From IMG/VR virus record IMGVR_UViG_3300023174_000038, positions 186,001 to 250,000 of that record: a stretch of DNA of 64,000 nt; one strand, 5' to 3'. Shown one piece after another: positions 1-12,286 of the stretch. The position numbers were made by a program, and so were the translations under genes. Position 1 is the stretch's first letter. Each line of letters begins with the position of its first letter. Below the pieces are notes generated by a model. The model ran no database searches. It was not told where the DNA came from and worked only from the letters and a program-made list of their open reading frames with translations.

Positions 1-1
1 C

Positions 2-79
2 CCAAAAGATTATACGTTTAAAAAGCAATGGTGGGAATTTGACATATCTGGACTTATCATAAAACTGATAAAAATTTAA
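2..79 (+). CDS. 3' end of probable fatty acid (delta-9-type) desaturase, partial
   Basis: Reads PKDYTFKKQWWEFDISGLIIKLIKI*; WWEFD resembles the C-terminal WWE(I/F)D motif of acyl-lipid desaturases; next gene is desaturase-like. Confidence 0.55.
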   Translation, partial: PKDYTFKKQWWEFDISGLIIKLIKI

Positions 80-511
80 ATGTTTGTTTTGTATTTTTTG
101 TTATGGACTCTAATGTTATATTGGATCCATAGAATAGGTCATTATCTACCTGTGATGCGTAATATACATATGCATCATCATAGATTTGTACTACAACATA
201 AGACCACGTGGCATTGGTCTAATCTATTCTTGTTTAATGATGACTGGACTAGTACTATAGATTTATGGCTTACTGAAGTTATACCTACATTACTTTTTAG
301 TCTAGTAACAGGACAATGGTGGATAAGTATATTTTATTATATATGGGCAGCGTTTATACAAGAAACAATAGAACACAATAAAAATTTTAACACCCCTATA
401 TTAACTAGTGGCAAATGGCATTTAATACATCACCGCTCTACTTTTAATTACGGGTTGTTTATACCCATATGGGATATAATATTTAGGACATACATACGTG
501 TACACAAGTGA
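80..511 (+). CDS. Fatty acid hydroxylase / sterol desaturase family protein
   Basis: His boxes YWIHRIGH, HMHHH, EH, HLIHH, NYG and hydrophobic segments. Confidence 0.8.
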   Translation: MFVLYFLLWTLMLYWIHRIGHYLPVMRNIHMHHHRFVLQHKTTWHWSNLFLFNDDWTSTIDLWLTEVIPTLLFSLVTGQWWISIFYYIWAAFIQETIEHNKNFNTPILTSGKWHLIHHRSTFNYGLFIPIWDIIFRTYIRVHK

Positions 512-1424
512 AAACAATTGGTATCAATGGCAATATGGTGATGAACCACTATTTGGTCGTCAAACAAGTAATTTGCCGTTTAACACATTCTACAGTAAAT
601 CAGATGTGCTGATTGGTTCCTTTAAGGAAGAATTACAGAAGGCAGCAAAAAGTACATTGGATCATTACCCCGGATTAAAACCTTGCATATTCTTTAGTGG
701 TGGGGTAGATAGTGAATTGATTCTACGTGCTTATTTAGATATAGGTGCTAATCCTGAAGTATATATTGTACGATATAAAAACGATTTAAACATTTATGAT
801 GTAAGCTATGCTATAACCATTTGTACGATATTAAAAGTTGAATATAATTTAATAGATTTTAATTTACAACAATTTTATGAAAATGATGCTGAAAAAATAG
901 CAGAGGATGCTCAGATAGATCGTCCTAGAATGTTGCCTCACATTAAATTTACTGAATGTGCAGATGGATTAATTATTGTAGGTCATAGCGATATCCGATG
1001 GTATAGACCACACGATGATTATACTAAAAAAGCTACGTGGTTAGCACAAGACTTTGAGCATGATATTGGTTGTGACAAATATAATATATTGCACAATCGT
1101 CCTGCAATCTATCAATGGTGGAAATGGACACCCGGTTTAGTAATATCTTATACTCAACTTAAATGGTTTAAACAATTAGTCAATGATGAAATAATAGGAA
1201 AATTGGGACTTAATTCTTCAAAACTATTAGGATTCAGAGAAGCATATCCCGACTTAATAACTAGAGAAAAACAAACTGGTTTTGAAAAGACTGATGAATT
1301 AATAAATGAATTTGAATCTTTCCTCAAACAAAAATATAAAGGTTTGCCTTATAGACAACTAGTAAATAGAACGTTAGATGACCTATTGACAGAGATAATT
1401 GGAATCCCGCATGATATTAAGTAA
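498..1424 (+). CDS. PP-loop (adenine nucleotide alpha hydrolase-like) protein
   Basis: FFSGGVDSE motif; paralog of 20304-21209. Confidence 0.7.
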   Translation: MYTSENNWYQWQYGDEPLFGRQTSNLPFNTFYSKSDVLIGSFKEELQKAAKSTLDHYPGLKPCIFFSGGVDSELILRAYLDIGANPEVYIVRYKNDLNIYDVSYAITICTILKVEYNLIDFNLQQFYENDAEKIAEDAQIDRPRMLPHIKFTECADGLIIVGHSDIRWYRPHDDYTKKATWLAQDFEHDIGCDKYNILHNRPAIYQWWKWTPGLVISYTQLKWFKQLVNDEIIGKLGLNSSKLLGFREAYPDLITREKQTGFEKTDELINEFESFLKQKYKGLPYRQLVNRTLDDLLTEIIGIPHDIK

Positions 1425-2589
1425 TAAAACTAATGGCTATTACATTGTCAATGGTGTCTCTACTGGTAACAAATTACAAGCAATACTTGAGGCTAGTAAA
1501 ACAAAATCAGAATTACGTTGGAATTTCTATGATGATATATTTTCTGCAGCCAGTAGTAAATTCAACAACAATCACATATTGCTTAAAGAATTATATAGAG
1601 CAAGAGCCCAGCAATTAAGAGATAGTAATGAATATCTAATTCTAAATTATAGTGGCGGTAGCGATAGTCATAATATACTAATGACTTTTTTAGAGTATAA
1701 TATAAAACTAGATCATATTTTTGTTCAATGGCCTGAACAATTAATGGACAAAGGTATATATACTCCTAATAGATTAGACAGAACTAACGCAAATTTTCAC
1801 AGTGAATGGGATTTAGTATTAAAGAAAGACTTAGTTTGGTTGAGTAGTAAGTATCCTGAAATTACTATTGAGATAGCAGATTGGACTACTACAGTAAAAG
1901 AGCAATTTTACAAAGATGATATATTTGCCAATGATGTTAGTAACCTGCCTAGCATTGCTAGGGCCCAAAAACAAAATACATTTAGTATAACAGAAGGTAC
2001 GCTAGCACTTCAGGGCAAAAAAGTGGCTAGTATATTTGGAGTTGATAAGCCGTGTGTAATTCATAAAGAAGGTAAATGGTTCTTTTACTTTGTTGATACT
2101 GCTTGTATGGCTCAACCAAATCCTGATAATCCATATGGTACTGAGTATTTTTATTGGTCTCCTAATTTTCCTGATATTGCAGTAGCACAGGCTCATATGA
2201 TGAAACGTTATTTTGAAATAAATAATACCAAAGCATACTTAGTACAGGCACCGTCTGAGCGTATAAAAGTAGACCCGTCATTTATTAATATCAGCTATGA
2301 ACATCATTACCTTGAATATGCACAAGTAGCAGAAATTGCAAAACTAGTTTGTTATCCATATTGGGACTTCAATCGCTTTCAAGCAGATAAACCTTTTGCA
2401 GTATTAGATGGATTTAAATTGGGAACAAGAGCGTGGGATAATGTTCTTACTAAAATACCTAATTTTAACCGTGTACAACAAGCATGGGAATATCATTGGA
2501 AAAGTTATTTAAAACAGATAGATATGAAGTTTATGAGAAATCAGGACACAGTTAATGTTTGTAAAACTAAATGGCATCATTTTGGATAA
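1411..2589 (+). CDS. PP-loop (adenine nucleotide alpha hydrolase-like) protein
   Basis: NYSGGSDSH motif; ATG at 1411 preferred over TTG at 1399. Confidence 0.7.
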   Translation: MILSNKTNGYYIVNGVSTGNKLQAILEASKTKSELRWNFYDDIFSAASSKFNNNHILLKELYRARAQQLRDSNEYLILNYSGGSDSHNILMTFLEYNIKLDHIFVQWPEQLMDKGIYTPNRLDRTNANFHSEWDLVLKKDLVWLSSKYPEITIEIADWTTTVKEQFYKDDIFANDVSNLPSIARAQKQNTFSITEGTLALQGKKVASIFGVDKPCVIHKEGKWFFYFVDTACMAQPNPDNPYGTEYFYWSPNFPDIAVAQAHMMKRYFEINNTKAYLVQAPSERIKVDPSFINISYEHHYLEYAQVAEIAKLVCYPYWDFNRFQADKPFAVLDGFKLGTRAWDNVLTKIPNFNRVQQAWEYHWKSYLKQIDMKFMRNQDTVNVCKTKWHHFG

Positions 2590-2623
2590 TTTCCCGCAAT
2601 CTTAGGCTAGGAATAAATATTTT

Positions 2624-2938
2624 ATGTATACAATTTTTAAAAAACAAATAAGGGAGTCATTAAACATCCCTTTTTATTTTGAGAAACATCTTACACCAAA
2701 TGAGTATAAGGTATATTTTCACACTAATTTTGTTGTAAATGAAAAATTTATTTCACATGAAGTAACTTATTCAGAAGATAAATTAATTATTATTGACAAA
2801 TTAGTTTGGTCATCACGTGATGCATTTTTAGATTATGCGTCAGATGCATTTTGTTATGACATATTAATGTTTCCGAATAAAATGTATAATATTAAAAATA
2901 AAATTGCAACAGTAATATCAGTAGAGGGGATATCATAA
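2624..2938 (+). CDS. Small hypothetical protein, paralog of 3562-3867
   Basis: Shared pattern (R..NI.PFY; SEDKL/SDDNL; W.S.D); TAAATA 4 nt upstream of ATG. Confidence 0.7.
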   Translation: MYTIFKKQIRESLNIPFYFEKHLTPNEYKVYFHTNFVVNEKFISHEVTYSEDKLIIIDKLVWSSRDAFLDYASDAFCYDILMFPNKMYNIKNKIATVISVEGIS

Positions 2939-3528
2939 TGACAATAGGGTTACCAATTTGGAAGACGTTTGAATCCAACGATTTTTTTAAAGATTTACAG
3001 ATCCCTAAAGATTGGGATACATTAGAAGATTTTGTTAATTGGTATATGGAATCTAAAATTCCTATTATGATTCCATGGAATGCTAAAGTTATACGTAGTG
3101 ATGATGCTGTGGCTATTTCTATTTTCAGAAAAGGCCAGTATCAAGTAGAATTTTATTTAGAATATCCTGAAATGTATATACGTAAACATTCACATCCTAG
3201 AATGGAAGTTATAACTATGGATTTGGGTGGAGGAGGATTAACACCTAGAAATGAAAATAATACGTCAAGGATATGGGGTACTGCTTATATGAAATTATTA
3301 GCAGGCGAGTATCATGGTGGTGACACTAGTAGTTTATTAAGTAATGGTTTTTGCACACTTGCATTTCAAAAATGGGAAGATCCTACTGAAATGACTTCTG
3401 CAGCCATTCAATGGAAAGGTGAAATCCAAGGGCCTATTCAAGCAAAACTTATTAAAGATAATGTTAAAACAGCATTAGTTCAGGATAATTATGCAGATGC
3501 TACTGGAATAGATAAAAACAATCAATAA
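2938..3528 (+). CDS. Cupin-like protein, paralog 1
   Basis: HSHPxME and later HG; shares SDDA..I..FRKG..QVE.YL and WKG...GPI with 5018-5587. Confidence 0.6.
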   Translation: MTIGLPIWKTFESNDFFKDLQIPKDWDTLEDFVNWYMESKIPIMIPWNAKVIRSDDAVAISIFRKGQYQVEFYLEYPEMYIRKHSHPRMEVITMDLGGGGLTPRNENNTSRIWGTAYMKLLAGEYHGGDTSSLLSNGFCTLAFQKWEDPTEMTSAAIQWKGEIQGPIQAKLIKDNVKTALVQDNYADATGIDKNNQ

Positions 3529-3561
3529 TTGGACTAAATATTATAACGGAGAAAAACAATC

Positions 3562-3867
3562 ATGTCATACAAAATAACAAGAACAGTAGTCAGACCTAAC
3601 ATCAGCACACCTTTTTATGAAGACCATGCTGATACCACCATTATAGCTTCTTATATTCAAACTACTTACCAGAATACTAATAAAATGATAGAAAAAACTA
3701 CTACAATTAGTGATGATAATTTAACATCTGTTACCGAAATTACCTGGGATTCATCTGATAGTTGGAATGAATTTCTTACTGATAACTATTTAATGACAAC
3801 ATATTTTATGCCTAGTAAAATTTATGAAGGTACACATGGTATGTTTTCTACATTTGTAGGTGCTTAA
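3562..3867 (+). CDS. Small hypothetical protein, paralog of 2624-2938
   Basis: ORF with GGAG SD and TAAATA upstream. Confidence 0.7.
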   Translation: MSYKITRTVVRPNISTPFYEDHADTTIIASYIQTTYQNTNKMIEKTTTISDDNLTSVTEITWDSSDSWNEFLTDNYLMTTYFMPSKIYEGTHGMFSTFVGA

Positions 3868-3876
3868 ATTTGATGT

Positions 3877-5016
3877 ATGACTCATTTTAATCCTCATTCA
3901 AATGATTGGTTAAAAAATAAATTTGATATATATAAAGAACTTAGAGCTAGAGATAAAGCATACTGGAGTGAAACCTATCAATTATATGTTATTACTAGAT
4001 ATGCCGATGTAAAATATGCGCTAAGTGAACATGATATCTTCTCATCTGCTAAGGGAAACTTAATAGTAGAAATGCCCTTTAGATTTGGCAGAACGTTAGG
4101 TGCTAGTGACAACCCATCACATGATGTATTTAAAAATATAGTAAAAAATGCGTATAGTAAGGATAATATAAATCGTATAGTAGATTTATTTTCTATTAAG
4201 GCAATAGAGTTACTTGAGAATAAACAATCGTTTAATGTTTCTACCGTTATAGAAGAACTAAGTGCTTGGGTAACTGCAGAAATATTAAACCTACCTTATG
4301 ATAAAGAACAGGTTAAAAATATCATTTTAGGTATACAGCGTCATAGTCCAGGATGTGTTTCAGTTAATGTAGATAGAACGTATTTAAATATATTTACTAA
4401 GTTACTTGATGACTTAACATCTAGAAAAGTAAAACCCACTGGTCCGGGTATATATAAAGAATTTATGACTAATCATCCAGATGTACAACCGGTAATGTCT
4501 TTGTTTCATGGACCAACTATATCCGGAGCTAGTTCACTTACCGGAGCATTAGAATTTTTAACATTAGATGTAGTTAGAGAAAATCAATTAGATATATTAT
4601 TAGAAGATAGGAATAATATTCCCAGCGTAATAGAAGAATCATTAAGATTTCATGCATCAACTGGTAGATTTTCTAGAACAGTAACTAAAGATGTAACACT
4701 ACATGGGATTGACCTTAAACCAGGTGATAGAGTTGCGTTATGTTTAGAATCTGCAAATAGAGACCCTGAAAAATTCATAGACCCTGAGAAATTCATTCTT
4801 AATAGAAGTACAGTTGGTCAATTAGCATTTGGTCATGGATTACATGCTTGTATAGCATTAGCTATTAGTAAATCAATAATGACTAAATATTTAGATATAT
4901 TATTAGATGTTGTTGGCAAATACAAAATAACAACATCTAATTCTGAATTAGAATATGTAATGACTGCATCCGGCAATGATGATATGATATCTAATATATG
5001 TATAGAAAAAATATAA
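3877..5016 (+). CDS. Cytochrome P450
   Basis: EESLR (ExxR), SANRDPEKF, heme motif FGHGLHACIA. Confidence 0.93.
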   Translation: MTHFNPHSNDWLKNKFDIYKELRARDKAYWSETYQLYVITRYADVKYALSEHDIFSSAKGNLIVEMPFRFGRTLGASDNPSHDVFKNIVKNAYSKDNINRIVDLFSIKAIELLENKQSFNVSTVIEELSAWVTAEILNLPYDKEQVKNIILGIQRHSPGCVSVNVDRTYLNIFTKLLDDLTSRKVKPTGPGIYKEFMTNHPDVQPVMSLFHGPTISGASSLTGALEFLTLDVVRENQLDILLEDRNNIPSVIEESLRFHASTGRFSRTVTKDVTLHGIDLKPGDRVALCLESANRDPEKFIDPEKFILNRSTVGQLAFGHGLHACIALAISKSIMTKYLDILLDVVGKYKITTSNSELEYVMTASGNDDMISNICIEKI

Positions 5017-5017
5017 T

Positions 5018-5587
5018 ATGACAACTAGATACAATGATAATCCTGACTATGTAAGAAAGGCATTCAATCAACTAGCAGATCCATTTGCTGATTTTGTTGT
5101 GCCTGAAACTTGGGACAACGTACAAGAATTTGCAGATTGGTGGATGGGAATACGTATGCCTATTGTTTTTCCTAAGTATCCGGAAGTATTTTTGTCAGAT
5201 GATGCTACTGCTATATGTTTATTCCGTAAAGGACGATTTCAAGTTGAGTTGTATTTAATACACCCAAAGCCCGGTGTTCCAACACATGAACATCCTGATG
5301 TTGAAGTGATTAAAATACGTACCGGGTTACCCGGAGGACCAGTAGCAAGTGATGTATTATATAATGGTCAAGCACACGGGTCTGGTATGAAATTAGAAGC
5401 AGAGATAAGAGGGTTCCCCTTACTTGCCATTCAGCATTGGCTTACTAGGGAGCCTACTACTATTGCATCAATGTGGAAAGGTCCTACTGCAGGACCTATA
5501 CATGAAGCACTTATACGCAGATACAATCCAGATGCGTATGTAATAGAAGGCTATGCAGATATTACACAAAAGATGAATAAGTCATAG
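5018..5587 (+). CDS. Cupin-like protein, paralog 2
   Basis: HEHPDVE and AHG motifs; similar to 2938-3528. Confidence 0.6.
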   Translation: MTTRYNDNPDYVRKAFNQLADPFADFVVPETWDNVQEFADWWMGIRMPIVFPKYPEVFLSDDATAICLFRKGRFQVELYLIHPKPGVPTHEHPDVEVIKIRTGLPGGPVASDVLYNGQAHGSGMKLEAEIRGFPLLAIQHWLTREPTTIASMWKGPTAGPIHEALIRRYNPDAYVIEGYADITQKMNKS

Positions 5588-6055
5588 TGACTTTAACATT
5601 TCTTCATGAATAGGACCTAGTGGCTCTCCACGATATTCTATAGTAGCACTTAATGGGTTTTTGATATCGGCAGGCCAACGTTGAATGTTATAAACTACTG
5701 CACCACGTGGTCCTATATCAAACCCATGTGTAATACTACTAGGACTAATTTTTCCTATAACACCCACATCTTCATCAGTAAGAACAATTGTCATAAGTGG
5801 TACAGGGTCGGGAAATTTAAGATAAGCAGTCATATCCCCACTTATAAAAATTACTTGATTCTCAAAAGGATGTGAATGCATTACTGTTGTTTTGTTTGGA
5901 AACAATAAGTAATATTCAATTACTACATTACCCTCAACCCATGCTAATGTACTAGCACTAGTGTCGGTATAGAAAACTCTATTATTTGGGATGTTAGGCA
6001 TATGGCAAAAACCACTGTCAACAAACGATTGTATTATCTCATCTGCGCTACGCAT
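5582..6055 (-). CDS. Cupin-like protein, paralog 3
   Basis: HSHPFEN, THG, EYRGEPLGPIHE matching paralogs 1 and 2. Confidence 0.6.
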   Translation of the reverse strand: MRSADEIIQSFVDSGFCHMPNIPNNRVFYTDTSASTLAWVEGNVVIEYYLLFPNKTTVMHSHPFENQVIFISGDMTAYLKFPDPVPLMTIVLTDEDVGVIGKISPSSITHGFDIGPRGAVVYNIQRWPADIKNPLSATIEYRGEPLGPIHEEMLKSL

Positions 6056-6134
6056 ATTTTAGTACTCTCTTTCAATATATTTATTCACATTTAGTACTCA
6101 TATTGATTTTTGGGTCATTTGTTTTTTAAAATGC

Positions 6135-6163
6135 TTGACATTAATTCTTGGCTGTGTTATACT
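6135..6163 (+). promoter_or_regulatory. Sigma70-type promoter
   Basis: TTGACA-17 nt-TATACT. Confidence 0.8.
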
Positions 6164-6227
6164 TCAGCATGAATTGAAAAAAGGTGTAAAAATACACTAA
6201 TTTACAACCAGGACTAAATAAAAGACT

Positions 6228-6365
6228 ATGATGAATAAAACTTGTAACATGCTAAAGCATATCGGACAGTGGCTAACGTTAGTCAGTGTATCCTTTGTAC
6301 CAGCATATCCAACAAGTATTCGCGGTTCAAATGATAACCAAGAAAGAACCCCGGGGACTAGGTAA
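6228..6365 (+). CDS. Putative attenuator leader peptide (45 aa, all 20 amino acids)
   Basis: MMNKTCNMLKHIGQWLTLVSVSFVPAYPTSIRGSNDNQERTPGTR*; TAAATA at 6215-6220; terminator follows. Confidence 0.65.
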   Translation: MMNKTCNMLKHIGQWLTLVSVSFVPAYPTSIRGSNDNQERTPGTR

Positions 6366-6392
6366 CAAGTTAACATCATAACAACTTTATCT

Positions 6393-6433
6393 AACCCCTG
6401 GGAAACTAAAAAGTCTCAGGGGTTTTTGCTTTT
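6393..6433 (+). terminator. Intrinsic terminator / attenuator hairpin
   Basis: AACCCCTGGGA...TCTCAGGGGTT stem followed by TTTGCTTTT. Confidence 0.8.
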
Positions 6434-6445
6434 ACAGAGAGGAAT

Positions 6446-6474
6446 TTGACAAGAAATGGATAAACAGATAGAAT
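6446..6474 (+). promoter_or_regulatory. Sigma70-type promoter
   Basis: TTGACA-17 nt-TAGAAT. Confidence 0.65.
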
Positions 6475-6623
6475 ACAAAACTTCTGAAAACAAACGTGAT
6501 TGGTTTAGCAATCATGTTTTGACTAAGGAACAAGTAGCACAGTTGATAGAGAATAAACTTCAACGTGCTAAAGTCTATCAAGAGGCTATTGAGAAAGTTA
6601 AAAAACTAACTTATACCAATTGA
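6456..6623 (+). CDS. Small hypothetical protein (55 aa)
   Basis: MDKQIEYKTSENKRDWFSNHVLTKEQVAQLIENKLQRAKVYQEAIEKVKKLTYTN*; GAGG upstream. Confidence 0.55.
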   Translation: MDKQIEYKTSENKRDWFSNHVLTKEQVAQLIENKLQRAKVYQEAIEKVKKLTYTN

Positions 6624-6624
6624 T

Positions 6625-6750
6625 AGATAGCGTGAATAGGCAACGAGAGCCGTAATACAGCGCAAAATGTATAGAATGGGCGGACTGAGGCATAAAATCT
6701 GTGGCGGTAACACAGAAAGTCAGAATCAGGCGGAGGTAACGATCTCCGCA
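6625..6750 (+). ncRNA. Candidate structured ncRNA A
   Basis: GC-enriched non-coding stretch; hairpins TCTGTG/CACAGA and GCGGAG/CTCCGC. Confidence 0.45.
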
Positions 6751-6759
6751 GAAAAGGAT

Positions 6760-7374
6760 TTAGTTCCTTTTCTTATATAAATCTCTTTCATTATTGTAAC
6801 GATTGAATTTACGACCTTTAATCCAACCCTGGTCATAATAGTGAGGATAAAGCGCATATGGAATACATTGACTCTTGCTCAAATCAAAGTTTGAAACCCA
6901 GATAGTATTTCCTTTAGCATTTCCTTTCCTTTCTTTTGTCCAACTAAGGCGTTGTCCATGTGAACTGGCCGCTAGGTATTTTTCACGATAAACGGCATCA
7001 TTTAACATTCTATCTCGGTGCTTTAATCCTGCAATCTTAGCAGCCTTGGTTTGCTGTCCCGGTTGATGTCCTTGATTAGGTAATGTGTTTATATAAGAAA
7101 AGGAACCGTGGCCCCCTTCTACTATATTATAAGTAGTGTCTAAACTAACGAAATCCGCGTTTACGACCTGTTTTTCTCTAAATAACATTGATTCTTTGTC
7201 ATTGAAGTGTTCAATGATTTCTTTGACAAAATTCTCTTTACCATATTTTTTGATTGCACGATGAAGATTCAGACCGGATCCAAAGTACCCATCATTTAAG
7301 TCGGAAGTTTGATGAACACCTATATAGATTTTATTATTTAATGTATTGGTGATTTTGTATAGATAATAGAACAT
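6760..7374 (-). CDS. GIY-YIG homing endonuclease (Seg-like)
   Basis: YLYKITN...KIYIG, YFGSG, AIKKYGKENF, YNIVEGG. Confidence 0.88.
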   Translation of the reverse strand: MFYYLYKITNTLNNKIYIGVHQTSDLNDGYFGSGLNLHRAIKKYGKENFVKEIIEHFNDKESMLFREKQVVNADFVSLDTTYNIVEGGHGSFSYINTLPNQGHQPGQQTKAAKIAGLKHRDRMLNDAVYREKYLAASSHGQRLSWTKERKGNAKGNTIWVSNFDLSKSQCIPYALYPHYYDQGWIKGRKFNRYNNERDLYKKRN

Positions 7375-7428
7375 ATTGTATTTATACGGACAGTAAGATG
7401 AAACTATATTAATATACTAACCCTATCA

Positions 7429-7529
7429 TGTCGTGTAGTGATACACGGCATTCTAAAACATACATCGTGGAAAATAAGGCCAAGAGGGCAACCCTGTTGA
7501 TTAGGGTGTACTATGTGTGTTTTAGAATG
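7429..7529 (+). ncRNA. Candidate structured ncRNA B (long closing stem)
   Basis: Hairpin TGTCGTGTA/TACACGGCA then 17-bp stem CATTCTAAAACATACAT/ATGTGTGTTTTAGAATG ending at the tRNA-Arg start. Confidence 0.55.
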
Positions 7530-7605
7530 CGACCGTAACTCAGTGGATTAGAGTACCTGTCTACGAAATAGGGAGTCGGAGGTTCAAGTCCTTCCGGTCG
7601 CACCA
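7529..7605 (+). tRNA. tRNA-Arg(ACG)
   Basis: Cloverleaf, anticodon arm CCTGT-CT ACG AA-ATAGG, encoded CCA. Confidence 0.95.
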
Positions 7606-7611
7606 ATATAT

Positions 7612-7687
7612 GGGACCATAGCTCAGTCGGTAGAGCAGTGGACTTTTAATCCATTGGTCGGGCGTTCGAACCGCCCTGGTCCCACCA
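7612..7687 (+). tRNA. tRNA-Lys(TTT)
   Basis: GTGGA-CT TTT AA-TCCAT, CCA. Confidence 0.95.
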
Positions 7688-7693
7688 TAATAT

Positions 7694-7783
7694 GGAAACG
7701 TGGCAGAGTTTGGTTTATTGCAACAGTCTTGAAAACTGTCGGTCCGAAAGGGCCCGTGAGTTCAAATCTCACCGTTTCTACCA
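7694..7783 (+). tRNA. tRNA-Ser(TGA)
   Basis: ACAGT-CT TGA AA-ACTGT, long variable arm, CCA. Confidence 0.95.
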
Positions 7784-7784
7784 T

Positions 7785-7861
7785 GGTGCTTGTCGTCAAG
7801 CGGTTAAGACCTCGGATTGTGATTCCGATATGCGTGGGTTCAAATCCCATCAAGCACCCCA
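7785..7861 (+). tRNA. tRNA-His(GTG)
   Basis: TCGGA-TT GTG AT-TCCGA, G-1:C73, CCA. Confidence 0.95.
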
Positions 7862-7862
7862 T

Positions 7863-7937
7863 GGATGTATAGCACAGCGGTAGTGCAATTCCTTCATACG
7901 GAATAGGTCAGTAGTTCAAATCTACTTACATCCACCA
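7863..7937 (+). tRNA. tRNA-Met(CAT), probably elongator
   Basis: ATTCC-TT CAT AC-GGAAT, CCA. Confidence 0.85.
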
Positions 7938-7942
7938 AACAT

Positions 7943-8016
7943 GCCCGGTTAGTTAAAAAGTATAACACACCCCTGATAAGGGTGAATCAGAGGAGCATTA
8001 CCTCTACTGGGTACCA
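7943..8016 (+). tRNA. tRNA-Ile(GAT), atypical D and T loops
   Basis: CACCC-CT GAT AA-GGGTG; acceptor GCCCGGT/ACTGGGT-A-CCA; T loop AGCATTA. Confidence 0.8.
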
Positions 8017-8023
8017 AATTTAC

Positions 8024-8097
8024 TGGGGGTTAGTTAAATGGTATAACATCGGATTTTGATTCCGAGATCACAAGTTCAATTCTTGTACCCTCTGCCA
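8024..8097 (+). tRNA. tRNA-Gln(TTG)
   Basis: TCGGA-TT TTG AT-TCCGA, CCA. Confidence 0.92.
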
Positions 8098-8179
8098 GTT
8101 ACGGAATATAATAAAGCCAAATTGATTGACAATCTGATATTAATCCTATTATAATGTTAAAAATTATATAGAAAGGTAT

Positions 8180-8503
8180 GTGATGGCAGGCAGATACATC
8201 GTTAGAAAATTTAAAAACGGAGTTAAGCATTTTTGGGATACTGATACAGGCAGTTGTATACACTGGTCTAAAGTCCAAGAGCGTATACCTAAAAAAGAAT
8301 TTGACAAATTATTTGAACAATTCAACAATAAACAACCAAAAAAAGAAAATGTTACTGAGCCACTTCCAAAACTATCTGAAATTTTGAGTGAAGTAATTAA
8401 CTTATATTCTGAAAAAATTTCAATAGAAGAAATAGTTGGAGCATTGGAGTTGTGCAAGACCCGTGCGTTAACAATGCATAAAATAAAAAAAATAAATCAA
8501 TGA
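8180..8503 (+). CDS. Hypothetical protein
   Basis: ORF after TTGACA-18-TATAAT (8126-8155) with AAGG SD. Confidence 0.65.
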   Translation: MMAGRYIVRKFKNGVKHFWDTDTGSCIHWSKVQERIPKKEFDKLFEQFNNKQPKKENVTEPLPKLSEILSEVINLYSEKISIEEIVGALELCKTRALTMHKIKKINQ

Positions 8504-8664
8504 GAGTGCCAGTTATGGGATAGACGATAGATTTGAGTCCCTGTCAATCTAGTCACAGTGGGGTTAACTGTGATGACACTATAGTATGATTTACGGGTGT
8601 ATAAACTTGCCTATACGAGACAATCTAACGAGGCTTACTAACAATAAGATAGTTAGGCTCCCTC
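8502..8664 (+). ncRNA. Candidate structured ncRNA C
   Basis: Hairpins TAGATT/AATCTA, TCACAGT/ACTGTGA, GTATA/TATAC, CTAAC/GTTAG; partial end pairing. Confidence 0.5.
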
Positions 8665-8671
8665 TTTTATC

Positions 8672-8746
8672 GGGTCCTTAGTTCAATGGATAGAATACGA
8701 TGCTTCGAACTTCGGGATGTGGGTTCAATTCCTGCAGGACCCGCCA
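8672..8746 (+). tRNA. tRNA-Arg(TCG)
   Basis: CGATG-CT TCG AA-CTTCG, acceptor GGGTCCT/AGGACCC-G-CCA. Confidence 0.88.
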
Positions 8747-8793
8747 TATGGCATTAAATACATATAGTGATAATAACAGAAAAGGAGTACTAC

Positions 8794-9354
8794 ATGGCTG
8801 TTCTAGCACTAGATATCTCGGGAGTTCCCCGGCAATGGATATCAAATGATGACGCAATTACCTATAAAGCAAAAGATGCCATAGCATGGTCAATGGGTAA
8901 TATTGTGGCTAAATATCGTGGTGGCATACAAAATGACGGTACATTAAGTTACTTAGAAGCTAATAGCATTATTGCTATCAAAGGTCATGGATTCAATCCA
9001 TACAAACACTCATGTGTTGCATTAACTAATAAAACATTGTTTGGTCGTGATAGACATGTATGTGCTTATTGCGGTGAACAGTTTCCAAACTATCATCTAT
9101 TAAGTCGTGACCACATTGTTCCACGTAGCAAAGGTGGTGAAAACACTTGGATGAATGTTGTTACCAGTTGTAAAACTTGTAACAGCAAAAAAGGACATAA
9201 GAGTTTAAAAGAAGTACGTATGGAATTACTATATGCACCTTATGTCCCAAACCACTACGAAAATATGATATTACAACATAGAACAATACTTGCTGACCAA
9301 ATGGAATATTTGTTAGCAGGTGTTCCAAAACATAGTAGAATATTATTAAGTTAG
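8794..9354 (+). CDS. HNH endonuclease family protein
   Basis: RDRHVCAYCG, SRDHIVPRSKGG, NVVTSCKTCNSKK; AAGGAG SD before ATG 8794. Confidence 0.9.
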   Translation: MAVLALDISGVPRQWISNDDAITYKAKDAIAWSMGNIVAKYRGGIQNDGTLSYLEANSIIAIKGHGFNPYKHSCVALTNKTLFGRDRHVCAYCGEQFPNYHLLSRDHIVPRSKGGENTWMNVVTSCKTCNSKKGHKSLKEVRMELLYAPYVPNHYENMILQHRTILADQMEYLLAGVPKHSRILLS

Positions 9355-9379
9355 TGTATAATACTATTAAATAAAATAC

Positions 9380-9454
9380 TCCCTTATAGCTCAGTGGTAG
9401 AGCAGCGCCCTTGTAAGGCGAAGGTCCCGTGTTCAAGTCATGGTGGGGGAACCA
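9380..9454 (+). tRNA. tRNA-Thr(TGT)
   Basis: CGCC-CT TGT AA-GGCG, CCA. Confidence 0.93.
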
Positions 9455-9461
9455 AATATAT

Positions 9462-9537
9462 TCTCTTGTAGCTCAGTCGGTAGAGCGTTTGACTGTTAAT
9501 CAAAATGTCCCTGGTTCGAGCCCAGGCAAGGGAGCCA
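9462..9537 (+). tRNA. tRNA-Asn(GTT)
   Basis: TTTGA-CT GTT AA-TCAAA, CCA. Confidence 0.95.
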
Positions 9538-9542
9538 AATTT

Positions 9543-10241
9543 ATGCATAAGATAAAAATATTCAGTCATATCATTGATACCCCAGATAGTTTAATGATTT
9601 TTAATAATCAATTCTCTTTACTTAAAGAAACTGGGTTACTAGACGTGGCATACAAAATATATCTATGCGTTAACGGAGAAGTATCTAAATTTGATACAAT
9701 ACAAGAATTAGCGAATCAATATCATAATGTAGAAATGATTCATACCAATACTAGTATTGAACATTATGAATATCCCACATTAAATTTTCTTAAAGAAAAT
9801 ATTGATAACGATACTGATTCTTATATTTTGTATTTTCATGTTAAAGGTGCTAGTAAAAACGAATCCAAAGATATACGTAATTGGCGTTTTCTATTAGAAT
9901 ACTATAATATCATAAAATATCAAACCTGTATAGATTATCTTAACAAGGGATATGATACAGTTGGTATACTATATAGAGAGGGTTTTCATAGTCAATGGCT
10001 ACACTATAGTGGAAACTTTTGGTGGGCTAATTCTAATCATATTAAGCGTTTACCTAAATTACCTCACCCATCTGATACATTAGGTGGCGGGAATAGTAAA
10101 ATTAGTATGTTGCCGTATATGAATGAAAACTTTAGATATGACCATGAAGCTTGGATAGGTTGTGTCAAACCCTGGAATTATATATCGTTGTTCCAAGATG
10201 ATATAGAAGAAGAAACACGTAGGATAATGAAATTATGTTAG
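9543..10241 (+). CDS. Hypothetical protein, possibly glycosyltransferase-like
   Basis: YEYPTL, LYFHVKG, HYSGNFWWA motifs; start moved past the tRNAs. Confidence 0.6.
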   Translation: MHKIKIFSHIIDTPDSLMIFNNQFSLLKETGLLDVAYKIYLCVNGEVSKFDTIQELANQYHNVEMIHTNTSIEHYEYPTLNFLKENIDNDTDSYILYFHVKGASKNESKDIRNWRFLLEYYNIIKYQTCIDYLNKGYDTVGILYREGFHSQWLHYSGNFWWANSNHIKRLPKLPHPSDTLGGGNSKISMLPYMNENFRYDHEAWIGCVKPWNYISLFQDDIEEETRRIMKLC

Positions 10242-10951
10242 TATCAGTAGACCCTTTTTATCATGTAACCATTGACAATTTTTTTGAGGAATCTTTAGCA
10301 GAAAAACTATCTAATGAATTTATTGATTATAATGATGAACGTTGGTTTTATTACAATAATGTTATTGAAAATAAAAAAACATTAAACGATTGGAGATTTT
10401 TACCCAAACATATATATCAAGCATTCACTCAGTTTTGCTCAGATGAATTTGTTAAAAAACTACAAGATATGACTGGTATAGAAAAATTGTATCCTGATTA
10501 TGGATTGCATGGTGGCGGCTGTCATATGCATGGTAGAAACGGTAAACTTAATATACATAGAGATTATTCTATACACCCTAAATTAGGATTAGAACGAAAG
10601 TTAAATCTTATTATATATCTATCTAAAGATTGGGATACGTCATGGGGAGGTGGATTAGAATTATGGTCACACGATGATGAAAACAATCAACCAAAAGAAA
10701 AAGTAAAAGAAGTAGAATGTGTTTTTAATCGTGCTGTACTTTTTGATACGACACAAGATTCTTGGCATGGTTTACCTGAACCCTTACGTTGTCCTGCAGG
10801 TGTCTATAGAAAAAGTTTAGCTATGTATTATATGACTAACCCTAGCCTAGAGGTTGACCCAAGACAACGGGCATTATTTGCACCCACAGAAAATCAGAAA
10901 AATGATATTGAAGTAAAAAACTTCATAGAAGAAAGAACAAAGCTTTCTTAA
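10235..10951 (+). CDS. 2OG-Fe(II) oxygenase
   Basis: HRD...LIIYL..WGGGLELW..FNRAVLF..SWHG..RKS. Confidence 0.88.
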   Translation: MLVSVDPFYHVTIDNFFEESLAEKLSNEFIDYNDERWFYYNNVIENKKTLNDWRFLPKHIYQAFTQFCSDEFVKKLQDMTGIEKLYPDYGLHGGGCHMHGRNGKLNIHRDYSIHPKLGLERKLNLIIYLSKDWDTSWGGGLELWSHDDENNQPKEKVKEVECVFNRAVLFDTTQDSWHGLPEPLRCPAGVYRKSLAMYYMTNPSLEVDPRQRALFAPTENQKNDIEVKNFIEERTKLS

Positions 10952-10954
10952 TAG

Positions 10955-11029
10955 CTGGCGTTAGTATAATGGATAATACAATCGGCTTCTACCCGATGAA
11001 TGTGGGTTCGATTCCTGCACGCCGGACCA
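10955..11029 (+). tRNA. tRNA-Arg(TCT)
   Basis: ATCGG-CT TCT AC-CCGAT, CCA. Confidence 0.92.
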
Positions 11030-11083
11030 AATAATATACGTATTTTATAGGTTAGAGATAAATACTCTAACCGAGGAGAGAGT

Positions 11084-11425
11084 ATGTGGAAATGTAAAAC
11101 ATGTGAAAAAGAAGGACAGGAACATTTTTATAAAAGCCAAGCTTGGTATTGTAAAAGTTGTTGGAATGTTCGTACGGCACACCGATCTAAAAACAATGTA
11201 AAAATTCTTAAAGAAGAATACGGTGGAAAATGCACCAAGTGTGGTTACAATAAATGCATGGATGCACTACAGTTTCACCATGTTGATCCTACTAAAAAGG
11301 AATTTTCATTAGGGTTAGCAAGACAAAAAAATTTAGATAAACTTAGAAAAGAGATGGACAAGTGTATTTTGGTTTGTAGTAATTGTCATATTGAAATTCA
11401 CCATGACATACATAAAAATAAATAA
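11084..11425 (+). CDS. HNH endonuclease with Zn-binding Cys pairs
   Basis: CxxC pairs, LQFHHVDP, CILVCSNCH. Confidence 0.85.
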   Translation: MWKCKTCEKEGQEHFYKSQAWYCKSCWNVRTAHRSKNNVKILKEEYGGKCTKCGYNKCMDALQFHHVDPTKKEFSLGLARQKNLDKLRKEMDKCILVCSNCHIEIHHDIHKNK

Positions 11426-11427
11426 AA

Positions 11428-11456
11428 TAGAGGTTCGATTCCTCTACGCCGGACCA
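11428..11456 (+). repeat. Duplicated 3' end (T arm and acceptor strand) of tRNA-Arg(TCT)
   Basis: AGAGGTTCGATTCCTCTACGCCGGACCA vs GTGGGTTCGATTCCTGCACGCCGGACCA at 11002-11029. Confidence 0.9.
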
Positions 11457-12035
11457 TTATTGAATTAGAAGTTGCCAATCTTCATTGCTATAGTGATAAT
11501 CTTCCAACACTTCTAGCATTCTTGCAAAGACAATTAATCCTCTTTTGTGATTAATTAATTCTATTTGATGTAATTTTATCTTCTTTTCAGCAAAAGTTTT
11601 TAATAAATTCTCACCCTCTTTTTTCAACTTAATTTTTTTTGAAACAATATTCAATTTGGCTATTAGATTGTTACATTCTACGATGGCAACAGAGGTTTGT
11701 TGTTGTAATGCACGTATTTCTATTTTCATTTTTAGTATTAAGTCATCAAATTCTGGGTTAATGTGTGGTAGAAATTGTGTTATCATAACAGACAGTCTAC
11801 CAAAGACTTCAGTATTAAGATTGAAGTCATCATAGTGATCACCTGTTGAATCATAGTGTTCACGTTTAGTTGGATCACTTAACACTTCATATGCTAATTT
11901 CATTCGCTTAAACTTTTCTACATCTCCTCCCTTGTCAGGATGATATAATTGTGCCAAGATTCTGTATTTTTGTTTGATTTCTTCAGACGTACAGGTTTTT
12001 GGTAATTCTAAATCATCGTATAGGGAGGTTGTCAT
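11457..12035 (-). CDS. DnaJ-domain protein
   Basis: LYDDLEL...YHPDKGG...AYEVLSDPTKREHYD. Confidence 0.88.
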   Translation of the reverse strand: MTTSLYDDLELPKTCTSEEIKQKYRILAQLYHPDKGGDVEKFKRMKLAYEVLSDPTKREHYDSTGDHYDDFNLNTEVFGRLSVMITQFLPHINPEFDDLILKMKIEIRALQQQTSVAIVECNNLIAKLNIVSKKIKLKKEGENLLKTFAEKKIKLHQIELINHKRGLIVFARMLEVLEDYHYSNEDWQLLIQ

Positions 12036-12088
12036 AACAATATTTATCATGAAATATTGCATGTAGTATTAAGTACTATGTTTAAAAT

Positions 12089-12198: not shown

Positions 12199-12286
12199 CA
12201 TAGCATGAGTTGAGAAAGTCATCGTACTAATCAACAAGGTTCTTTAAAATTCTGAGTTATCATATAGCCCTGTTTAAGTTACAGGG

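What the first reader, a model, noticed from the sequence alone, without database searches (positions are those of the whole stretch)
1..6055. Phage biosynthetic-like cluster: desaturases, PP-loop ATPases, cupin triplet and P450
Seen: two His-box desaturase/hydroxylase genes, two SGGxDS proteins, two small paralogs, three HxHPxxE paralogs and a P450, tightly coupled with TAAATA boxes. Established: PP-loop enzymes adenylate substrates (asparagine synthetase, lasso cyclase, tRNA-modifying families). Inference: a late pathway modifying a lipid, small molecule or virion protein; the product is unknown.
Basis: partly seen in the sequence, partly recalled or inferred. Interest (0 to 1): 0.7.

Follow-up and report, generated by a model that had tools for sequence, protein, structure and literature searches.

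The report
Lake jumbo-phage oxygenase and PP-loop island
An uncultivated 349-kb lake phage carries a tightly packed, probably late-transcribed gene array that recurs in related phage contigs: lipid desaturases, two ATP-dependent carboxylate-activating enzymes, small oxygenase-fold proteins, metal-binding cupins and a cytochrome P450. It most likely remodels host lipids and a carboxylic-acid metabolite, but no product is known.

Summary
Window 1-6055 holds the 3' end of a desaturase, a fatty-acid-hydroxylase-family gene, two SGGxDS PP-loop genes, two small paralogs, three cupin paralogs and a P450. Gaps run from -14 to +34 nt, and a TAAATA box sits in every real spacer.

The array is the right half of a larger island. 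It starts at least 3.6 kb upstream of the window (B12 radical SAM, two DesA-type desaturases), probably about 6 kb (AhpC/AhpD, GNAT).

The host genome is a complete 348.7-kb T4-related jumbo phage from lake water, probably infecting Burkholderiales.

The island is co-conserved in gene order in IMG/VR and metagenome contigs. PP1, PP2 and the P450 have no tblastn match in 50,697 GenBank phage records, and PP2 had none in a pattern scan of GTDB species genomes.

- The small paralogs are ABM-fold (dimeric alpha+beta barrel) proteins, not precursor peptides. They are repeatedly fused to the cupin in relatives.
- PP2 is a stand-alone asparagine-synthetase-type synthetase domain. It belongs to a large unannotated family known so far only from phage and metagenome contigs.
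- The P450 is CYP203A-like.

Best reading: a late auxiliary island with a membrane-lipid block and a carboxylate-adenylating, oxidative tailoring block. The substrate is inferred, not shown.

The parts
1..79 (+). 3' end of Des2, a 257-aa membrane fatty-acid desaturase. The gene starts 694 nt upstream of the window (genome 185306-186079).
   Evidence: ORF. Pfam FA_desaturase 9e-15. NCBIfam DesA-family hit 2.4e-25, below the equivalog cut-off. His boxes HRRLTH / HINHH / HNNHH read from the sequence.
80..511 (+). FAH: a 143-aa integral-membrane di-iron enzyme of the fatty-acid hydroxylase / sterol desaturase superfamily. Its stop overlaps the PP1 start.
   Evidence: PF04116 9.3e-12, 45.9 bits against 31, covering profile positions 1-132 of 132; the His motifs are conserved in six relatives; followed by a PP-loop gene in 6 of 6 gene-order patterns.
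498..1424 (+). PP1: a 308-aa PP-loop ATP pyrophosphatase (FSGGVDSE) in a family with no Pfam or NCBIfam model.
   Evidence: only a weak QueC hit (0.027); the family profile hits NH3-dependent NAD synthetase (1.4e-4), MJ0690 and QueC; hhalign to the PP2 profile gives 82% probability, E 1e-5; no tblastn match in GenBank phages.
1411..2589 (+). PP2: a 392-aa (396 from TTG at 1399) stand-alone asparagine-synthetase-type synthetase domain with PP-loop YSGGSDSH.
   Evidence: AF2 model pLDDT 89.9; best matches are AsnB 1ct9 (Z 9.8, 281 residues, model 3-387), human ASNS 9.5, TsnB9 8.4, beta-lactam synthetase 8.1 and CarA 7.0; 770 homologues and 1513 representatives at 50% identity; no PDB sequence hit and no Pfam hit; absent from GenBank phages; none found in a GTDB pattern scan.
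2614..2619 (+). TAAATA box (gaATAAATAttt), 10 nt before the smA start; a late-promoter-like element.
2624..2938 (+). smA: a 104-aa ABM-fold (dimeric alpha+beta barrel) protein. Its stop overlaps the cup1 ATG.
   Evidence: pLDDT 96.6, beta-alpha-beta-beta-alpha-beta. Foldseek matches FasU, SnoaB, IsdG and ActVA-Orf6 at probability 1.0. Z 9.3 to ActVA-Orf6. R10 and D74 are invariant.
2938..3528 (+). cup1: a 196-aa divergent cupin with HSHPRME(x6)G and a later invariant His.
   Evidence: H84, H86, P87 and H126 are invariant in 35 sequences; the profile weakly hits PDB cupins (0.039-0.4); the Atlas points to cupin / PCO_ADO; fused to the ABM domain in about 50 clusters.
3535..3540 (+). TAAATA box (gacTAAATAtta), 27 nt before the smB start, followed by a GGAG ribosome-binding site.
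3562..3867 (+). smB: a 101-aa paralog of smA (ABM fold by homology).
   Evidence: 26% identity, E 1.5e-10; aligned over its full length.
3877..5016 (+). A 379-aa cytochrome P450, CYP203A-like, with ExxR (EESLRF) and the heme-thiolate loop FGHGLHAC.
   Evidence: PF00067 8.5e-15; best PDB match 8FBC (P450-T2), E 1.4e-40, aligned over residues 3-140 and 241-340; no tblastn match in GenBank phages; the only P450 in the genome.
5018..5587 (+). cup2: a 189-aa cupin paralog (HEHPDVE).
5582..6055 (-). cup3: a 157-aa short cupin paralog (HSHPFEN), convergent with cup2 and overlapping it by 6 nt.
   Evidence: Orthologues sit at the same position in L001 and L136.
6078..6083 (-). TAAATA box on the minus strand (gaATAAATAtat), 28 nt before the cup3 start.

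Best explanation
This is the right half of a phage-specific auxiliary gene island in an uncultivated freshwater jumbo phage. The phage is T4-related (Rak2 / PA5oct-like capsid) and probably infects Burkholderiales. The island is most likely transcribed late, from TAAATA-type promoters, and consists of two modules that can occur apart.

(A) A membrane-lipid module. It holds two Delta9/DesA-type acyl-lipid desaturases, a minimal fatty-acid-hydroxylase-family di-iron enzyme translationally coupled to the PP-loop enzyme PP1, and a B12-type radical-SAM enzyme. A GNAT and AhpC/AhpD flank it. This module would desaturate, hydroxylate or otherwise alter host envelope lipids, while the peroxiredoxin pair removes peroxides.

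(B) A soluble tailoring module. PP2 is an asparagine-synthetase-type synthetase domain without a glutaminase domain. It would adenylate a carboxyl group with ATP and pass it to an amine, forming an amide or lactam. The ABM-fold proteins working with the cupins, together with a CYP203A-like P450, would oxidise the same molecule. That molecule is most likely a small, possibly aromatic, carboxylic acid, or a lipid-derived one. Electrons for the P450 and the desaturases would have to come from host redox partners.

Shown: gene content, folds, paralogy, co-conservation, the ABM-cupin fusion, and promoter-box placement. Inferred: timing, chemistry, substrate and the purpose for the phage.
For: - Gene families.
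- Tight coupling, and a TAAATA box in every spacer. Genome-wide positional enrichment of the box.
- Co-conservation: the order AhpC-AhpD-GNAT-rSAM-Des-x-Des-FAH-PP1-PP2-ABM-(cupin|P450) recurs in IMG/VR and metagenome contigs. Among 30 distinct gene-order patterns around PP2 homologues, PP1 is present in 20, a desaturase in 19, ABM in 15, rSAM in 10, and cupin and P450 in 9 each. FAH is followed by a PP-loop gene in 6 of 6.
- Modularity: L049 has PP2-cupin-ABM-P450-ABM with no desaturase within 10 kb. L136 has the lipid block plus PP1, an ABM-cupin fusion, ABM and a cup3-like gene, but no PP2 or P450.
- ABM and cupin act together: a fused 295-308-aa architecture occurs in about 50 clusters at 48-100% identity.
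- PP2 fold: AsnB, beta-lactam synthetase and TsnB9 are the best structural matches over nearly the whole protein. No Cys is invariant in PP1 or PP2, which argues against thiolase-type PP-loop chemistry.
- Carboxylate substrate: divergent PP2-like genes in four phage or metagenome contigs are directly followed by TctC/Bug solute-binding genes (E down to 2.8e-57). The one translated has a signal peptide.
- P450: the nearest solved relative is the CYP203A subfamily, which binds aromatic acids and phenols (PMC7780096).
- Phage Delta9 desaturases are an established auxiliary gene type (PMC5776448).
- No 2Fe-2S ferredoxin was found in the genome.
Against: - No expression data exist; no RNA run was listed.
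- No substrate is identified, and the aromatic-acid idea rests on distant analogies: about 45% identity to CYP203A over two segments only, and TctC neighbours seen only in relatives and absent from this genome.
- The cupin assignment is by motif and weak profile hits only.
- The conserved FAH-PP1 and PP1-like-Des pairs, and the overlap of PP1 with PP2, could equally mean that all genes act on one lipid.
- The co-occurrence sample was gathered through PP2 homologues, and many contigs are truncated.
- The complex prediction for cup1 with smA gave no verdict.
Confidence: 0.45

Rival explanations
1. All the genes form one pathway on a single lipid. Acyl chains or a lipid head group are desaturated, hydroxylated or methylated. 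A carboxyl group is then adenylated by PP1 or PP2 and amidated, and the product is further oxidised by the P450, cupins and ABM proteins. The result would be a phage-specific amide lipid or oxylipin-like molecule in the host envelope.
For: - The whole plus-strand array from Des1 to cup2 runs without a gap over 41 nt. FAH/PP1 and PP1/PP2 overlap by 14 nt.
- FAH is followed by a PP-loop gene in 6 of 6 patterns, and 'PP1-like then Des-like' pairs recur in at least eight loci.
- The lipid block sits directly next to an ABM-cupin fusion in L136.
- Second-tier PDB hits of the P450 include CYP153 alkane hydroxylases.
Against: - PP2-cupin-ABM-P450 occurs in other phages with no desaturase or hydroxylase within 10 kb.
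- From my own knowledge, not tested here: PP-loop enzymes are not known to activate fatty acids; ANL-type adenylating enzymes do that.
- The best P450 relative binds small aromatic compounds (PMC7780096).
Confidence: 0.2
2. The array is a loose collection of independent auxiliary genes gathered in a hypervariable region, with no shared substrate. This would resemble the oxygenase-rich islands of marine T4-like phages.
For: - Gene content varies between relatives, by presence or absence of PP2, the P450, cupins and extra PP2 copies.
- A divergent relative in run X6 matches 1-2540 and then departs.
- Pelagibacter phage Mosig has a comparable mix: desaturase, peroxiredoxin, TauD, GNAT and Asp/Arg hydroxylases.
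Against: - Overlapping stops and starts.
- Conserved adjacency of FAH-PP1 and PP2-ABM-cupin/P450 across identities down to about 30%.
- A recurrent ABM-cupin fusion.
- All members of these families in the genome lie in this one array.
Confidence: 0.15
3. The PP-loop enzymes modify nucleic acid. This could be tRNA from the adjacent 25-gene tRNA array (lysidine-, thiolation- or queuosine-type chemistry) or phage DNA, with the oxygenases being unrelated or further decorating a base.
For: - The array lies 1.5 kb from a block of 25 tRNA genes that includes three CAU-anticodon tRNAs.
- There are weak QueC hits for PP1.
- Foldseek hits of the PP2 core include TilS, MnmA, TtcA and LarE.
- The genome has a GTP cyclohydrolase I.
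Against: - Whole-protein structural matches are to AsnB-type synthetases (Z 9.8), not QueC (Z 5.0) or TilS (Z 5.8-6.8).
- No Cys is invariant.
- There is no TGT/DpdA in the genome, and the GTP cyclohydrolase gene lies about 80 kb away.
- In relatives the PP2 module sits in other contexts, beside TctC, PhyH and the P450.
Confidence: 0.08
4. The array is a RiPP or virion-protein modification system. The small paralogs would be precursor or carrier proteins processed by an asparagine-synthetase-like (lasso-cyclase-like) enzyme and by oxidases.
For: - The small genes lie directly after PP2, and PP2 has the fold family to which lasso cyclases belong.
- Late-type promoter boxes fit virion-related timing.
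Against: - The small proteins are confidently folded ABM domains.
- They are conserved along their whole length, with only about 10 variable C-terminal residues.
- They are often fused to the cupin.
- No leader peptidase or RiPP recognition element was found among the array's genes.
Confidence: 0.04

Closest known systems
Cyanophage-encoded Delta9 lipid desaturases (vFAD; Roitman et al., PMC5776448)
   Same: A phage-borne membrane desaturase with the three His boxes of the Delta9 / stearoyl-CoA-type family. It is interpreted as an auxiliary gene that alters host membrane lipids.
   Different: Here there are two paralogs (34% identical) in a non-cyanophage; the genome has no psbA. They are embedded in an array with a hydroxylase, B12 radical SAM, PP-loop enzymes, ABM proteins, cupins and a P450. 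The only distant tblastn matches among GenBank phages are Pelagibacter phage Mosig and an Acinetobacter phage assembly.
Oxygenase-rich accessory island of Pelagibacter phage Mosig EXVC030M (MT647606, annotated region)
   Same: A T4-like aquatic phage with a block holding FA_desaturase, peroxiredoxin, GNAT, TauD, Asp/Arg hydroxylases and radical-SAM genes.
   Different: Mosig has no annotated PP-loop, ABM, cupin or P450 genes in that block. Only the desaturase shows sequence similarity, at 25% identity.
Asparagine synthetase B family synthetase domains (AsnB, beta-lactam synthetase, carbapenam synthetase, TsnB9, lasso-peptide cyclases)
   Same: The PP-loop SGGxDS motif and the whole-domain fold (Z 9.8-7.0, 260-287 aligned residues). 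The expected chemistry is carboxylate adenylation followed by amide or lactam formation.
   Different: There is no Ntn glutaminase domain, only a remnant of about 60 residues. Identity is 7-8%. There is no Pfam Asn_synthase match. The family is known so far only from phage and metagenome contigs.
CYP203A subfamily P450s (P450-T2, PDB 8FBC; CYP203A1 of Rhodopseudomonas palustris; PMC7780096)
   Same: The best sequence match among solved structures (E 1.4e-40). It shares the ExxR and heme-Cys loop. P450-T2 has a Ser (S239) at the site equivalent to P450 BM3 T268 (PMC11334723), and the phage protein reads GASSLTG where that I-helix site is expected; this register was read by eye, because the stretch lies outside the HMMER alignment.
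   Different: Only residues 3-140 and 241-340 align. The phage protein is shorter (379 aa). Its substrate is unknown and no redox partner is encoded.
Virus-encoded P450s (giant viruses; Mycobacterium phage Adler; summarised in PMC9405906)
   Same: A P450 carried by a virus without its own redox partners.
   Different: That paper names a single phage P450. Here a P450 family recurs in 11 of 43 related IMG/VR loci and sits in a conserved gene context. It has no tblastn match at E 1e-5 in GenBank phages.
Tailoring enzyme sets of aromatic (type II) polyketide clusters: ABM monooxygenases/cyclases (ActVA-Orf6, SnoaB, FasU), cupins, P450s and AsnB-like amide synthetases (recalled from my own knowledge; a lead, not a test)
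   Same: The same combination of folds. The ABM model's top structural matches are exactly these enzymes.
   Different: No scaffold-forming enzyme was seen in the array or the flanks examined. A genome-wide search for polyketide or peptide synthases was not made. The substrate must therefore come from the host or the environment.

Membership tests
PP-loop ATP pyrophosphatase superfamily | SGGxDS/T pyrophosphate-binding loop at the end of the first strand of a Rossmann-like alpha/beta domain | tested here: met
   PP1 has FSGGVDSE and PP2 has YSGGSDSH. The motif residues are invariant in 17 and 37 homologues. The PP2 model superposes on AsnB, NadE, GMP synthetase, LarE and TilS cores. The PP1 profile hits NadE at 1.4e-4.
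Asparagine synthetase B (class II glutamine amidotransferase) family | N-terminal Ntn glutaminase domain with catalytic Cys, plus Pfam Asn_synthase in the C-terminal domain | tested here: not met
   PP2 is 392 aa and aligns to AsnB residues 116-515 only. None of 37 members has an Asn_synthase hit, and there is none in the genome. It works like the synthetase half but is not a member by sequence.
Lasso-peptide cyclase / RiPP system | A short precursor peptide with a variable core, plus a leader peptidase next to the cyclase | tested here: not met
   The adjacent small genes are ABM-fold domains that are conserved over their full length. No peptidase was found in the array.
ABM / dimeric alpha+beta barrel superfamily | A ferredoxin-like beta-alpha-beta-beta-alpha-beta fold of about 100 residues | tested here: met
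   Model pLDDT is 96.6. Foldseek gives probability 1.0 to FasU, SnoaB, IsdG and ActVA-Orf6, and Z 9.3-8 for 14 chains. There is no significant Pfam ABM sequence match. Dimer formation was not tested.
Cupin superfamily | Motif 1 G(x)5HxH(x)3-4E(x)6G and a further metal-binding His in motif 2, on a double-stranded beta-helix | tested here: inconclusive
   The HxHPxxE(x)6G region and a later His are conserved; H84, H86, P87 and H126 are invariant. Only weak profile hits to PDB cupins were found (E 0.039-0.4). One of 35 members hits Cupin_2 at 2.8e-4. The Atlas points to cupin families.
Cytochrome P450 | Pfam p450 above threshold, the ExxR motif and the FxxGxxxCxG heme-thiolate loop | tested here: met
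   PF00067 scores 54.9 bits against a cut-off of 22.8. EESLRF and FGHGLHAC are aligned to 8FBC. The I-helix acid-alcohol pair is not evident (GASSLTG, read by eye). Heme binding was not tested.
Membrane fatty-acid desaturase (Delta9 / DesA type) | Three His boxes (HxxxxH, HxxHH, HxxHH) in an integral-membrane protein, with Pfam FA_desaturase | tested here: met
   Des1 scores 6.2e-17 and Des2 9e-15, both above cut-off. The His boxes were read. The DesA equivalog cut-off is not reached (89 against 400 bits), so regiospecificity is not established.
Fatty-acid hydroxylase / sterol desaturase superfamily (PF04116) | A Pfam match over the whole domain, with conserved His clusters | tested here: met
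   45.9 bits against 31, covering profile positions 1-132 of 132. HRIGH, HxHHH, EHN and HLIHH are conserved in six relatives.
T4-type late transcription unit | A TATAAATA-like box about 10-35 nt upstream of starts, recognised by a gp55-type sigma factor | tested here: inconclusive
   The TAAATA core sits in every spacer of the array and is positionally enriched genome-wide. The full octamer is not enriched. A gp55 homologue was not searched for, and no transcript data exist.

The most novel reading that the evidence does not exclude
Freshwater jumbo phages may encode a self-contained small-molecule pathway. A phage-specific asparagine-synthetase-like amide or lactam synthetase (PP2, PP1) would work with an ABM-cupin oxygenase pair and a P450. 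A B12 radical-SAM enzyme and a GNAT are encoded beside them in this phage and some relatives. Together they would convert a host or imported carboxylic acid into a phage-made metabolite; some relatives also carry a secreted TctC/Bug binding protein that could capture such an acid. This would be natural-product-like biosynthesis by a phage, for example to act on the host, on competitors or on defence systems.
Probability: 0.15. Interest if true: 0.9.

Novelty: new variant of a known kind. Interest (0 to 1): 0.6.

Why it matters
Phage auxiliary genes are usually single borrowed host enzymes. Here a conserved multi-enzyme array is built largely from families with no cellular counterpart found so far.

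- The PP2 family has over 1,500 representative clusters (at 50% identity), no Pfam model and no named member.
- The array includes a P450, which the literature reports for only one phage.

If the enzymes act together, lake jumbo phages reprogramme host lipid or aromatic-acid chemistry late in infection in a way not yet described. The PP2, PP1 and ABM-cupin families would then become accessible targets for enzymology.

The array also offers a concrete test bed for what the many Fe/O2 enzymes in aquatic phage genomes are for.

Tried and rejected
- Megablast of 1-6100 against GenBank phages gave no match. tblastn of the P450, PP2 and PP1 gave no match either. Records near the window's own genome may be masked.
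- PHROGs gave only a weak QueC-like hit for PP1. NCBIfam gave nothing for FAH, PP1, PP2, cup1, orf197 or orf191.
- A sequence or profile search of PP2 against the PDB found nothing meaningful. Foldseek PDB and Swiss-Prot matches were weak and covered the core only. The VIA-align wide search was needed to find the fold.
- The ESM Atlas was not useful for smA because its model there is poor.
- A pattern scan of 185,579 GTDB species genomes with the PP2 alignment found no relative. This has limited sensitivity.
- Complex prediction on cup1 with smA gave no verdict (score 0.22 against a mark of 0.32). It is not evidence either way.
- No RNA sequencing run could be listed, so co-transcription is untested.
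- Rfam found no RNA element in 1-7600 apart from the first tRNA.
- Sigma-70-like sites are not enriched in the array (51 against 40.9 +/- 6.4).
- Literature searches found no description of this cluster.
- 7-deazaguanine DNA modification was considered and set aside, because the genome has no TGT/DpdA.
- A cyanophage identity was considered and rejected, because there is no psbA and the capsid is closest to Rak2 / PA5oct-type jumbo phages.

Full report
**What is there**

- Window 1-79 is the tail of a 257-aa fatty-acid desaturase gene that starts 694 nt upstream.
- 80-511 encodes a 143-aa member of the fatty-acid hydroxylase superfamily (PF04116, above cut-off).
- 498-1424 (PP1) and 1411-2589 (PP2) carry SGGVDS and SGGSDS PP-loops.
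- 2624-2938 (smA) and 3562-3867 (smB) are paralogs (E 1.5e-10).
- 2938-3528, 5018-5587 and 5582-6055(-) are three paralogs with HxHPxxE (E 4e-33 to 6e-6).
- 3877-5016 is a cytochrome P450 (PF00067 above cut-off; 392 PDB P450 chains matched).
- Gaps between genes run from -14 to +34 nt.

Every copy of these families in the 348.7-kb genome lies in this one array. Contigs of the probable source run tile the region without a difference. A run from another study holds identical pieces, so this is not an assembly artefact.

**The array is larger than the finding**

The window is bases 186001-250000 of a single 348,701-bp contig. Upstream lie, in order:
- an IscU fragment;
- AhpC and an AhpD-like protein;
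- a GNAT on the minus strand;
- an unassigned 191-aa gene;
- a B12-binding radical-SAM enzyme on the minus strand, with sub-threshold hits to class-B methyltransferases and a lipid-associated rSAM family;
- desaturase 1;
- an unassigned 197-aa gene;
- desaturase 2.

**Promoter boxes**

Every spacer of 33 nt or more holds a TAAATA box 10-55 nt before the next start. The boxes precede AhpC, rSAM, Des1, Des2, smA, smB and cup3. Genome-wide the hexamer piles up 10-35 nt upstream of starts. This pattern resembles the T4 late promoter, but the full octamer is not enriched. No transcript data could be found, so 'late' is an inference.

**Whose genome**

The record is an IMG/VR virus rated 100% complete. 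It has a T4-type Gp23 (E 5e-99). Its capsid protein is 67-73% identical to those of jumbo phages such as Sinorhizobium phage Phosso, Vibrio phage 2.275.O, PA5oct, GAP32 and Serratia BF. The sequence occurs in lake-water and freshwater metagenomes from several studies. The phage's DnaK is most similar (70-76%) to DnaK of Burkholderiales, especially Comamonadaceae such as Limnohabitans, Rubrivivax and Rhodoferax. That is a weak pointer to the host lineage.

**Co-conservation**

PP2 has 770 homologues in the large protein collection, none named. It has 1,513 representatives at 50% identity in the exhaustive search. It has no Pfam family, no match in 50,697 GenBank phage records and none in a pattern scan of GTDB species genomes. 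BFVD and Atlas structural neighbours are all uncultured-phage proteins.

Forty-three IMG/VR loci carrying a PP2 homologue were fetched and searched with the island's proteins. They give 30 distinct gene-order patterns:

| Family present | Patterns (of 30) |
|---|---|
| PP1 | 20 |
| desaturase | 19 |
| ABM protein | 15 |
| AhpD | 11 |
| radical SAM | 10 |
| cupin | 9 |
| P450 | 9 |

The full order AhpC-AhpD-GNAT-rSAM-Des-x-Des-FAH-PP1-PP2-ABM-cupin/P450 recurs, for example in L001, L015, L031, L036 and L047. FAH is followed directly by a PP-loop gene in 6 of 6 patterns. 'PP1-like then desaturase-like' pairs also recur.

The array is modular:
- A 156-kb lake contig has PP2-cupin-ABM-P450-ABM with no desaturase within 10 kb.
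- Another relative has the lipid block, then PP1, an ABM-cupin fusion, an ABM gene and a cup3-like gene, with no PP2 and no P450.
- A divergent strain in run X6 matches up to the end of PP2 and then departs.

This sample was collected through PP2, and many contigs are truncated. The frequencies are therefore indicative only.

**What the unknown proteins are**

PP2:
- With an alignment of 37 homologues it folds at pLDDT 89.9.
- An exhaustive structural comparison puts the synthetase domains of E. coli and human asparagine synthetase first (Z 9.8 and 9.5; about 280 residues; model residues 3-387). TsnB9, beta-lactam synthetase and carbapenam synthetase follow. Generic PP-loop cores such as NadE, GMP synthetase, LarE, TilS and QueC score Z 5-7.4.
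- It lacks the glutaminase domain and any Asn_synthase sequence signal.
- PP2 therefore works like the synthetase half of that family without being a member by sequence.

PP1:
- It is a distant relative of PP2 (hhalign E 1e-5).
- Its profile weakly hits NH3-dependent NAD synthetase.
- Neither family has an invariant cysteine, which speaks against sulfur-transfer chemistry.

The small proteins:
- They fold at pLDDT 96.6 into the ABM / dimeric alpha+beta barrel.
- Best matches are ActVA-Orf6, SnoaB, FasU and IsdG.
- They are enzyme-like domains, not precursor peptides.

The three HxHPxxE proteins:
- They fit the cupin motif, with invariant His-x-His-Pro and a later His.
- They give only weak profile hits to known cupins, so this assignment is probable rather than proven.
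- A fused ABM-cupin protein of about 300 residues occurs in roughly 50 protein clusters spanning 48-100% identity, on many contigs.
- In the window the smA stop overlaps the cup1 start.
- This is strong comparative evidence that the ABM and cupin proteins act together. A complex prediction gave no verdict.

The P450:
- Its nearest solved relative is P450-T2 of the CYP203A subfamily (E 1.4e-40), with ExxR and the heme-cysteine loop conserved.
- That subfamily binds substituted aromatic acids and phenols (PMC7780096).
- The genome encodes no 2Fe-2S ferredoxin, so host partners would be needed. The same has been noted for other viral P450s (PMC9405906).

**A clue to the substrate class**

Divergent PP2-like genes in four phage or metagenome contigs are each followed directly by a TctC/Bug-family solute-binding gene (Pfam E down to 2.8e-57). 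The one translated has a signal peptide. From my own knowledge, this family binds carboxylates and is expanded in Burkholderiales. This fits an enzyme that adenylates a carboxyl group. It also agrees loosely with the aromatic-acid preference of CYP203A and with the ABM/cupin oxidases. The window's own genome has no TctC gene, so this is indirect.

**Most likely mechanism**

I read the island as two modules under late-type promoters.
- Module A comprises Des1, Des2, FAH with PP1 and the B12 radical-SAM enzyme, flanked by a GNAT and AhpC/AhpD. It changes host membrane lipids, as shown experimentally for cyanophage Delta9 desaturases (PMC5776448). The peroxiredoxin pair would deal with peroxides.
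- Module B comprises PP2, the ABM-cupin pairs and the P450. It activates a carboxylic acid as an acyl-adenylate, forms an amide or lactam, and oxidises the molecule.

Folds, linkage and fusion are shown. Chemistry, substrate and benefit to the phage are inferred.

The main rival is a single lipid pathway, supported by the FAH-PP1-PP2 overlaps. Less likely are a loose collection of unrelated auxiliary genes, nucleic-acid modification (there is no TGT, no conserved Cys and an AsnB-type fold), and a RiPP or virion-protein system (the small proteins are ABM domains).

**Comparison and novelty**

Phage desaturases and oxygenase-rich islands are known; Pelagibacter phage Mosig has a comparable block. 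The combination of PP-loop synthetases, ABM-cupin pairs and a P450 in a conserved order is not described in the searched literature. Its core families have no named or characterised members. I class it as a new variant of a known kind, the phage auxiliary metabolic island, with a real chance that module B is a new phage-specific pathway.

Noticed in passing
window 53518-55464 (-): The phage encodes a full-length DnaK/Hsp70 (648 aa). Its closest cellular homologues (70-76% identity) are from Burkholderiales, mainly Comamonadaceae such as Limnohabitans, Rubrivivax and Rhodoferax. This is a possible host clue, and an unusual gene for a phage.
   Followed up: partly
window 7529-16935 (+): There is an array of 25 tRNA genes covering 20 amino acids, including three with a CAU anticodon. 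It is interspersed with small ORFs and an HNH-motif ORF at 8767-9354.
   Followed up: no
L007:9484-11233 (genome 179484-181233, upstream of the window): A truncated IscU/NifU_N gene (89 aa, profile positions 38-124), AhpC and an AhpD-like CMD-family gene sit just upstream of the island. They are co-conserved with it in many relatives.
   Followed up: partly
L049:15822-16799, L053:1494-2468, L054:1511-3297: Related phage or metagenome contigs encode TctC/Bug-family solute-binding proteins directly after PP2-like genes. The one translated (L049) has a signal peptide. This would be a phage gene for periplasmic capture of a carboxylate.
   Followed up: partly
window 6100-6480: The spacer after the array holds two near-consensus sigma-70-like promoters (6135-6163 with an extended -10 TG, and 6446-6474). 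Read by eye, a GC-rich hairpin with a T run lies at about 6397-6436; the terminator scan did not list it. This looks like a boundary between transcription units.
   Followed up: no
window 6760-7374 (-): A 204-aa ORF has a GIY-YIG-like N-terminus (read from the sequence). Two weaker paralogs lie elsewhere in the genome, one next to the major capsid gene. It is probably a homing endonuclease.
   Followed up: no
genome 270244-270774 (-), locus L051: There is a GTP cyclohydrolase I gene (E 7.7e-60) but no TGT/DpdA in the genome. Relatives L049 and L135 also carry GTP cyclohydrolase I within about 7 kb of their PP2 gene.
   Followed up: no
L007:11820-12395 and L007:14671-15264: The unassigned 191-aa and 197-aa genes inside the island have HxD...H patterns reminiscent of Fe(II)/2-oxoglutarate oxygenases (read by eye). 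They have no Pfam or NCBIfam hit. The 197-aa gene is co-conserved between the two desaturases.
   Followed up: no
window 61544-62878 (-): This gene is an ATP-dependent DNA ligase (phrog_114, E 1.3e-87).
   Followed up: no
L034 (IMGVR_UViG_GVMAG-S-1101181-88_000001): A 5.2-kb contig labelled as a giant-virus MAG carries two PP2-like genes. It is probably a phage contig binned with a giant virus.
   Followed up: no
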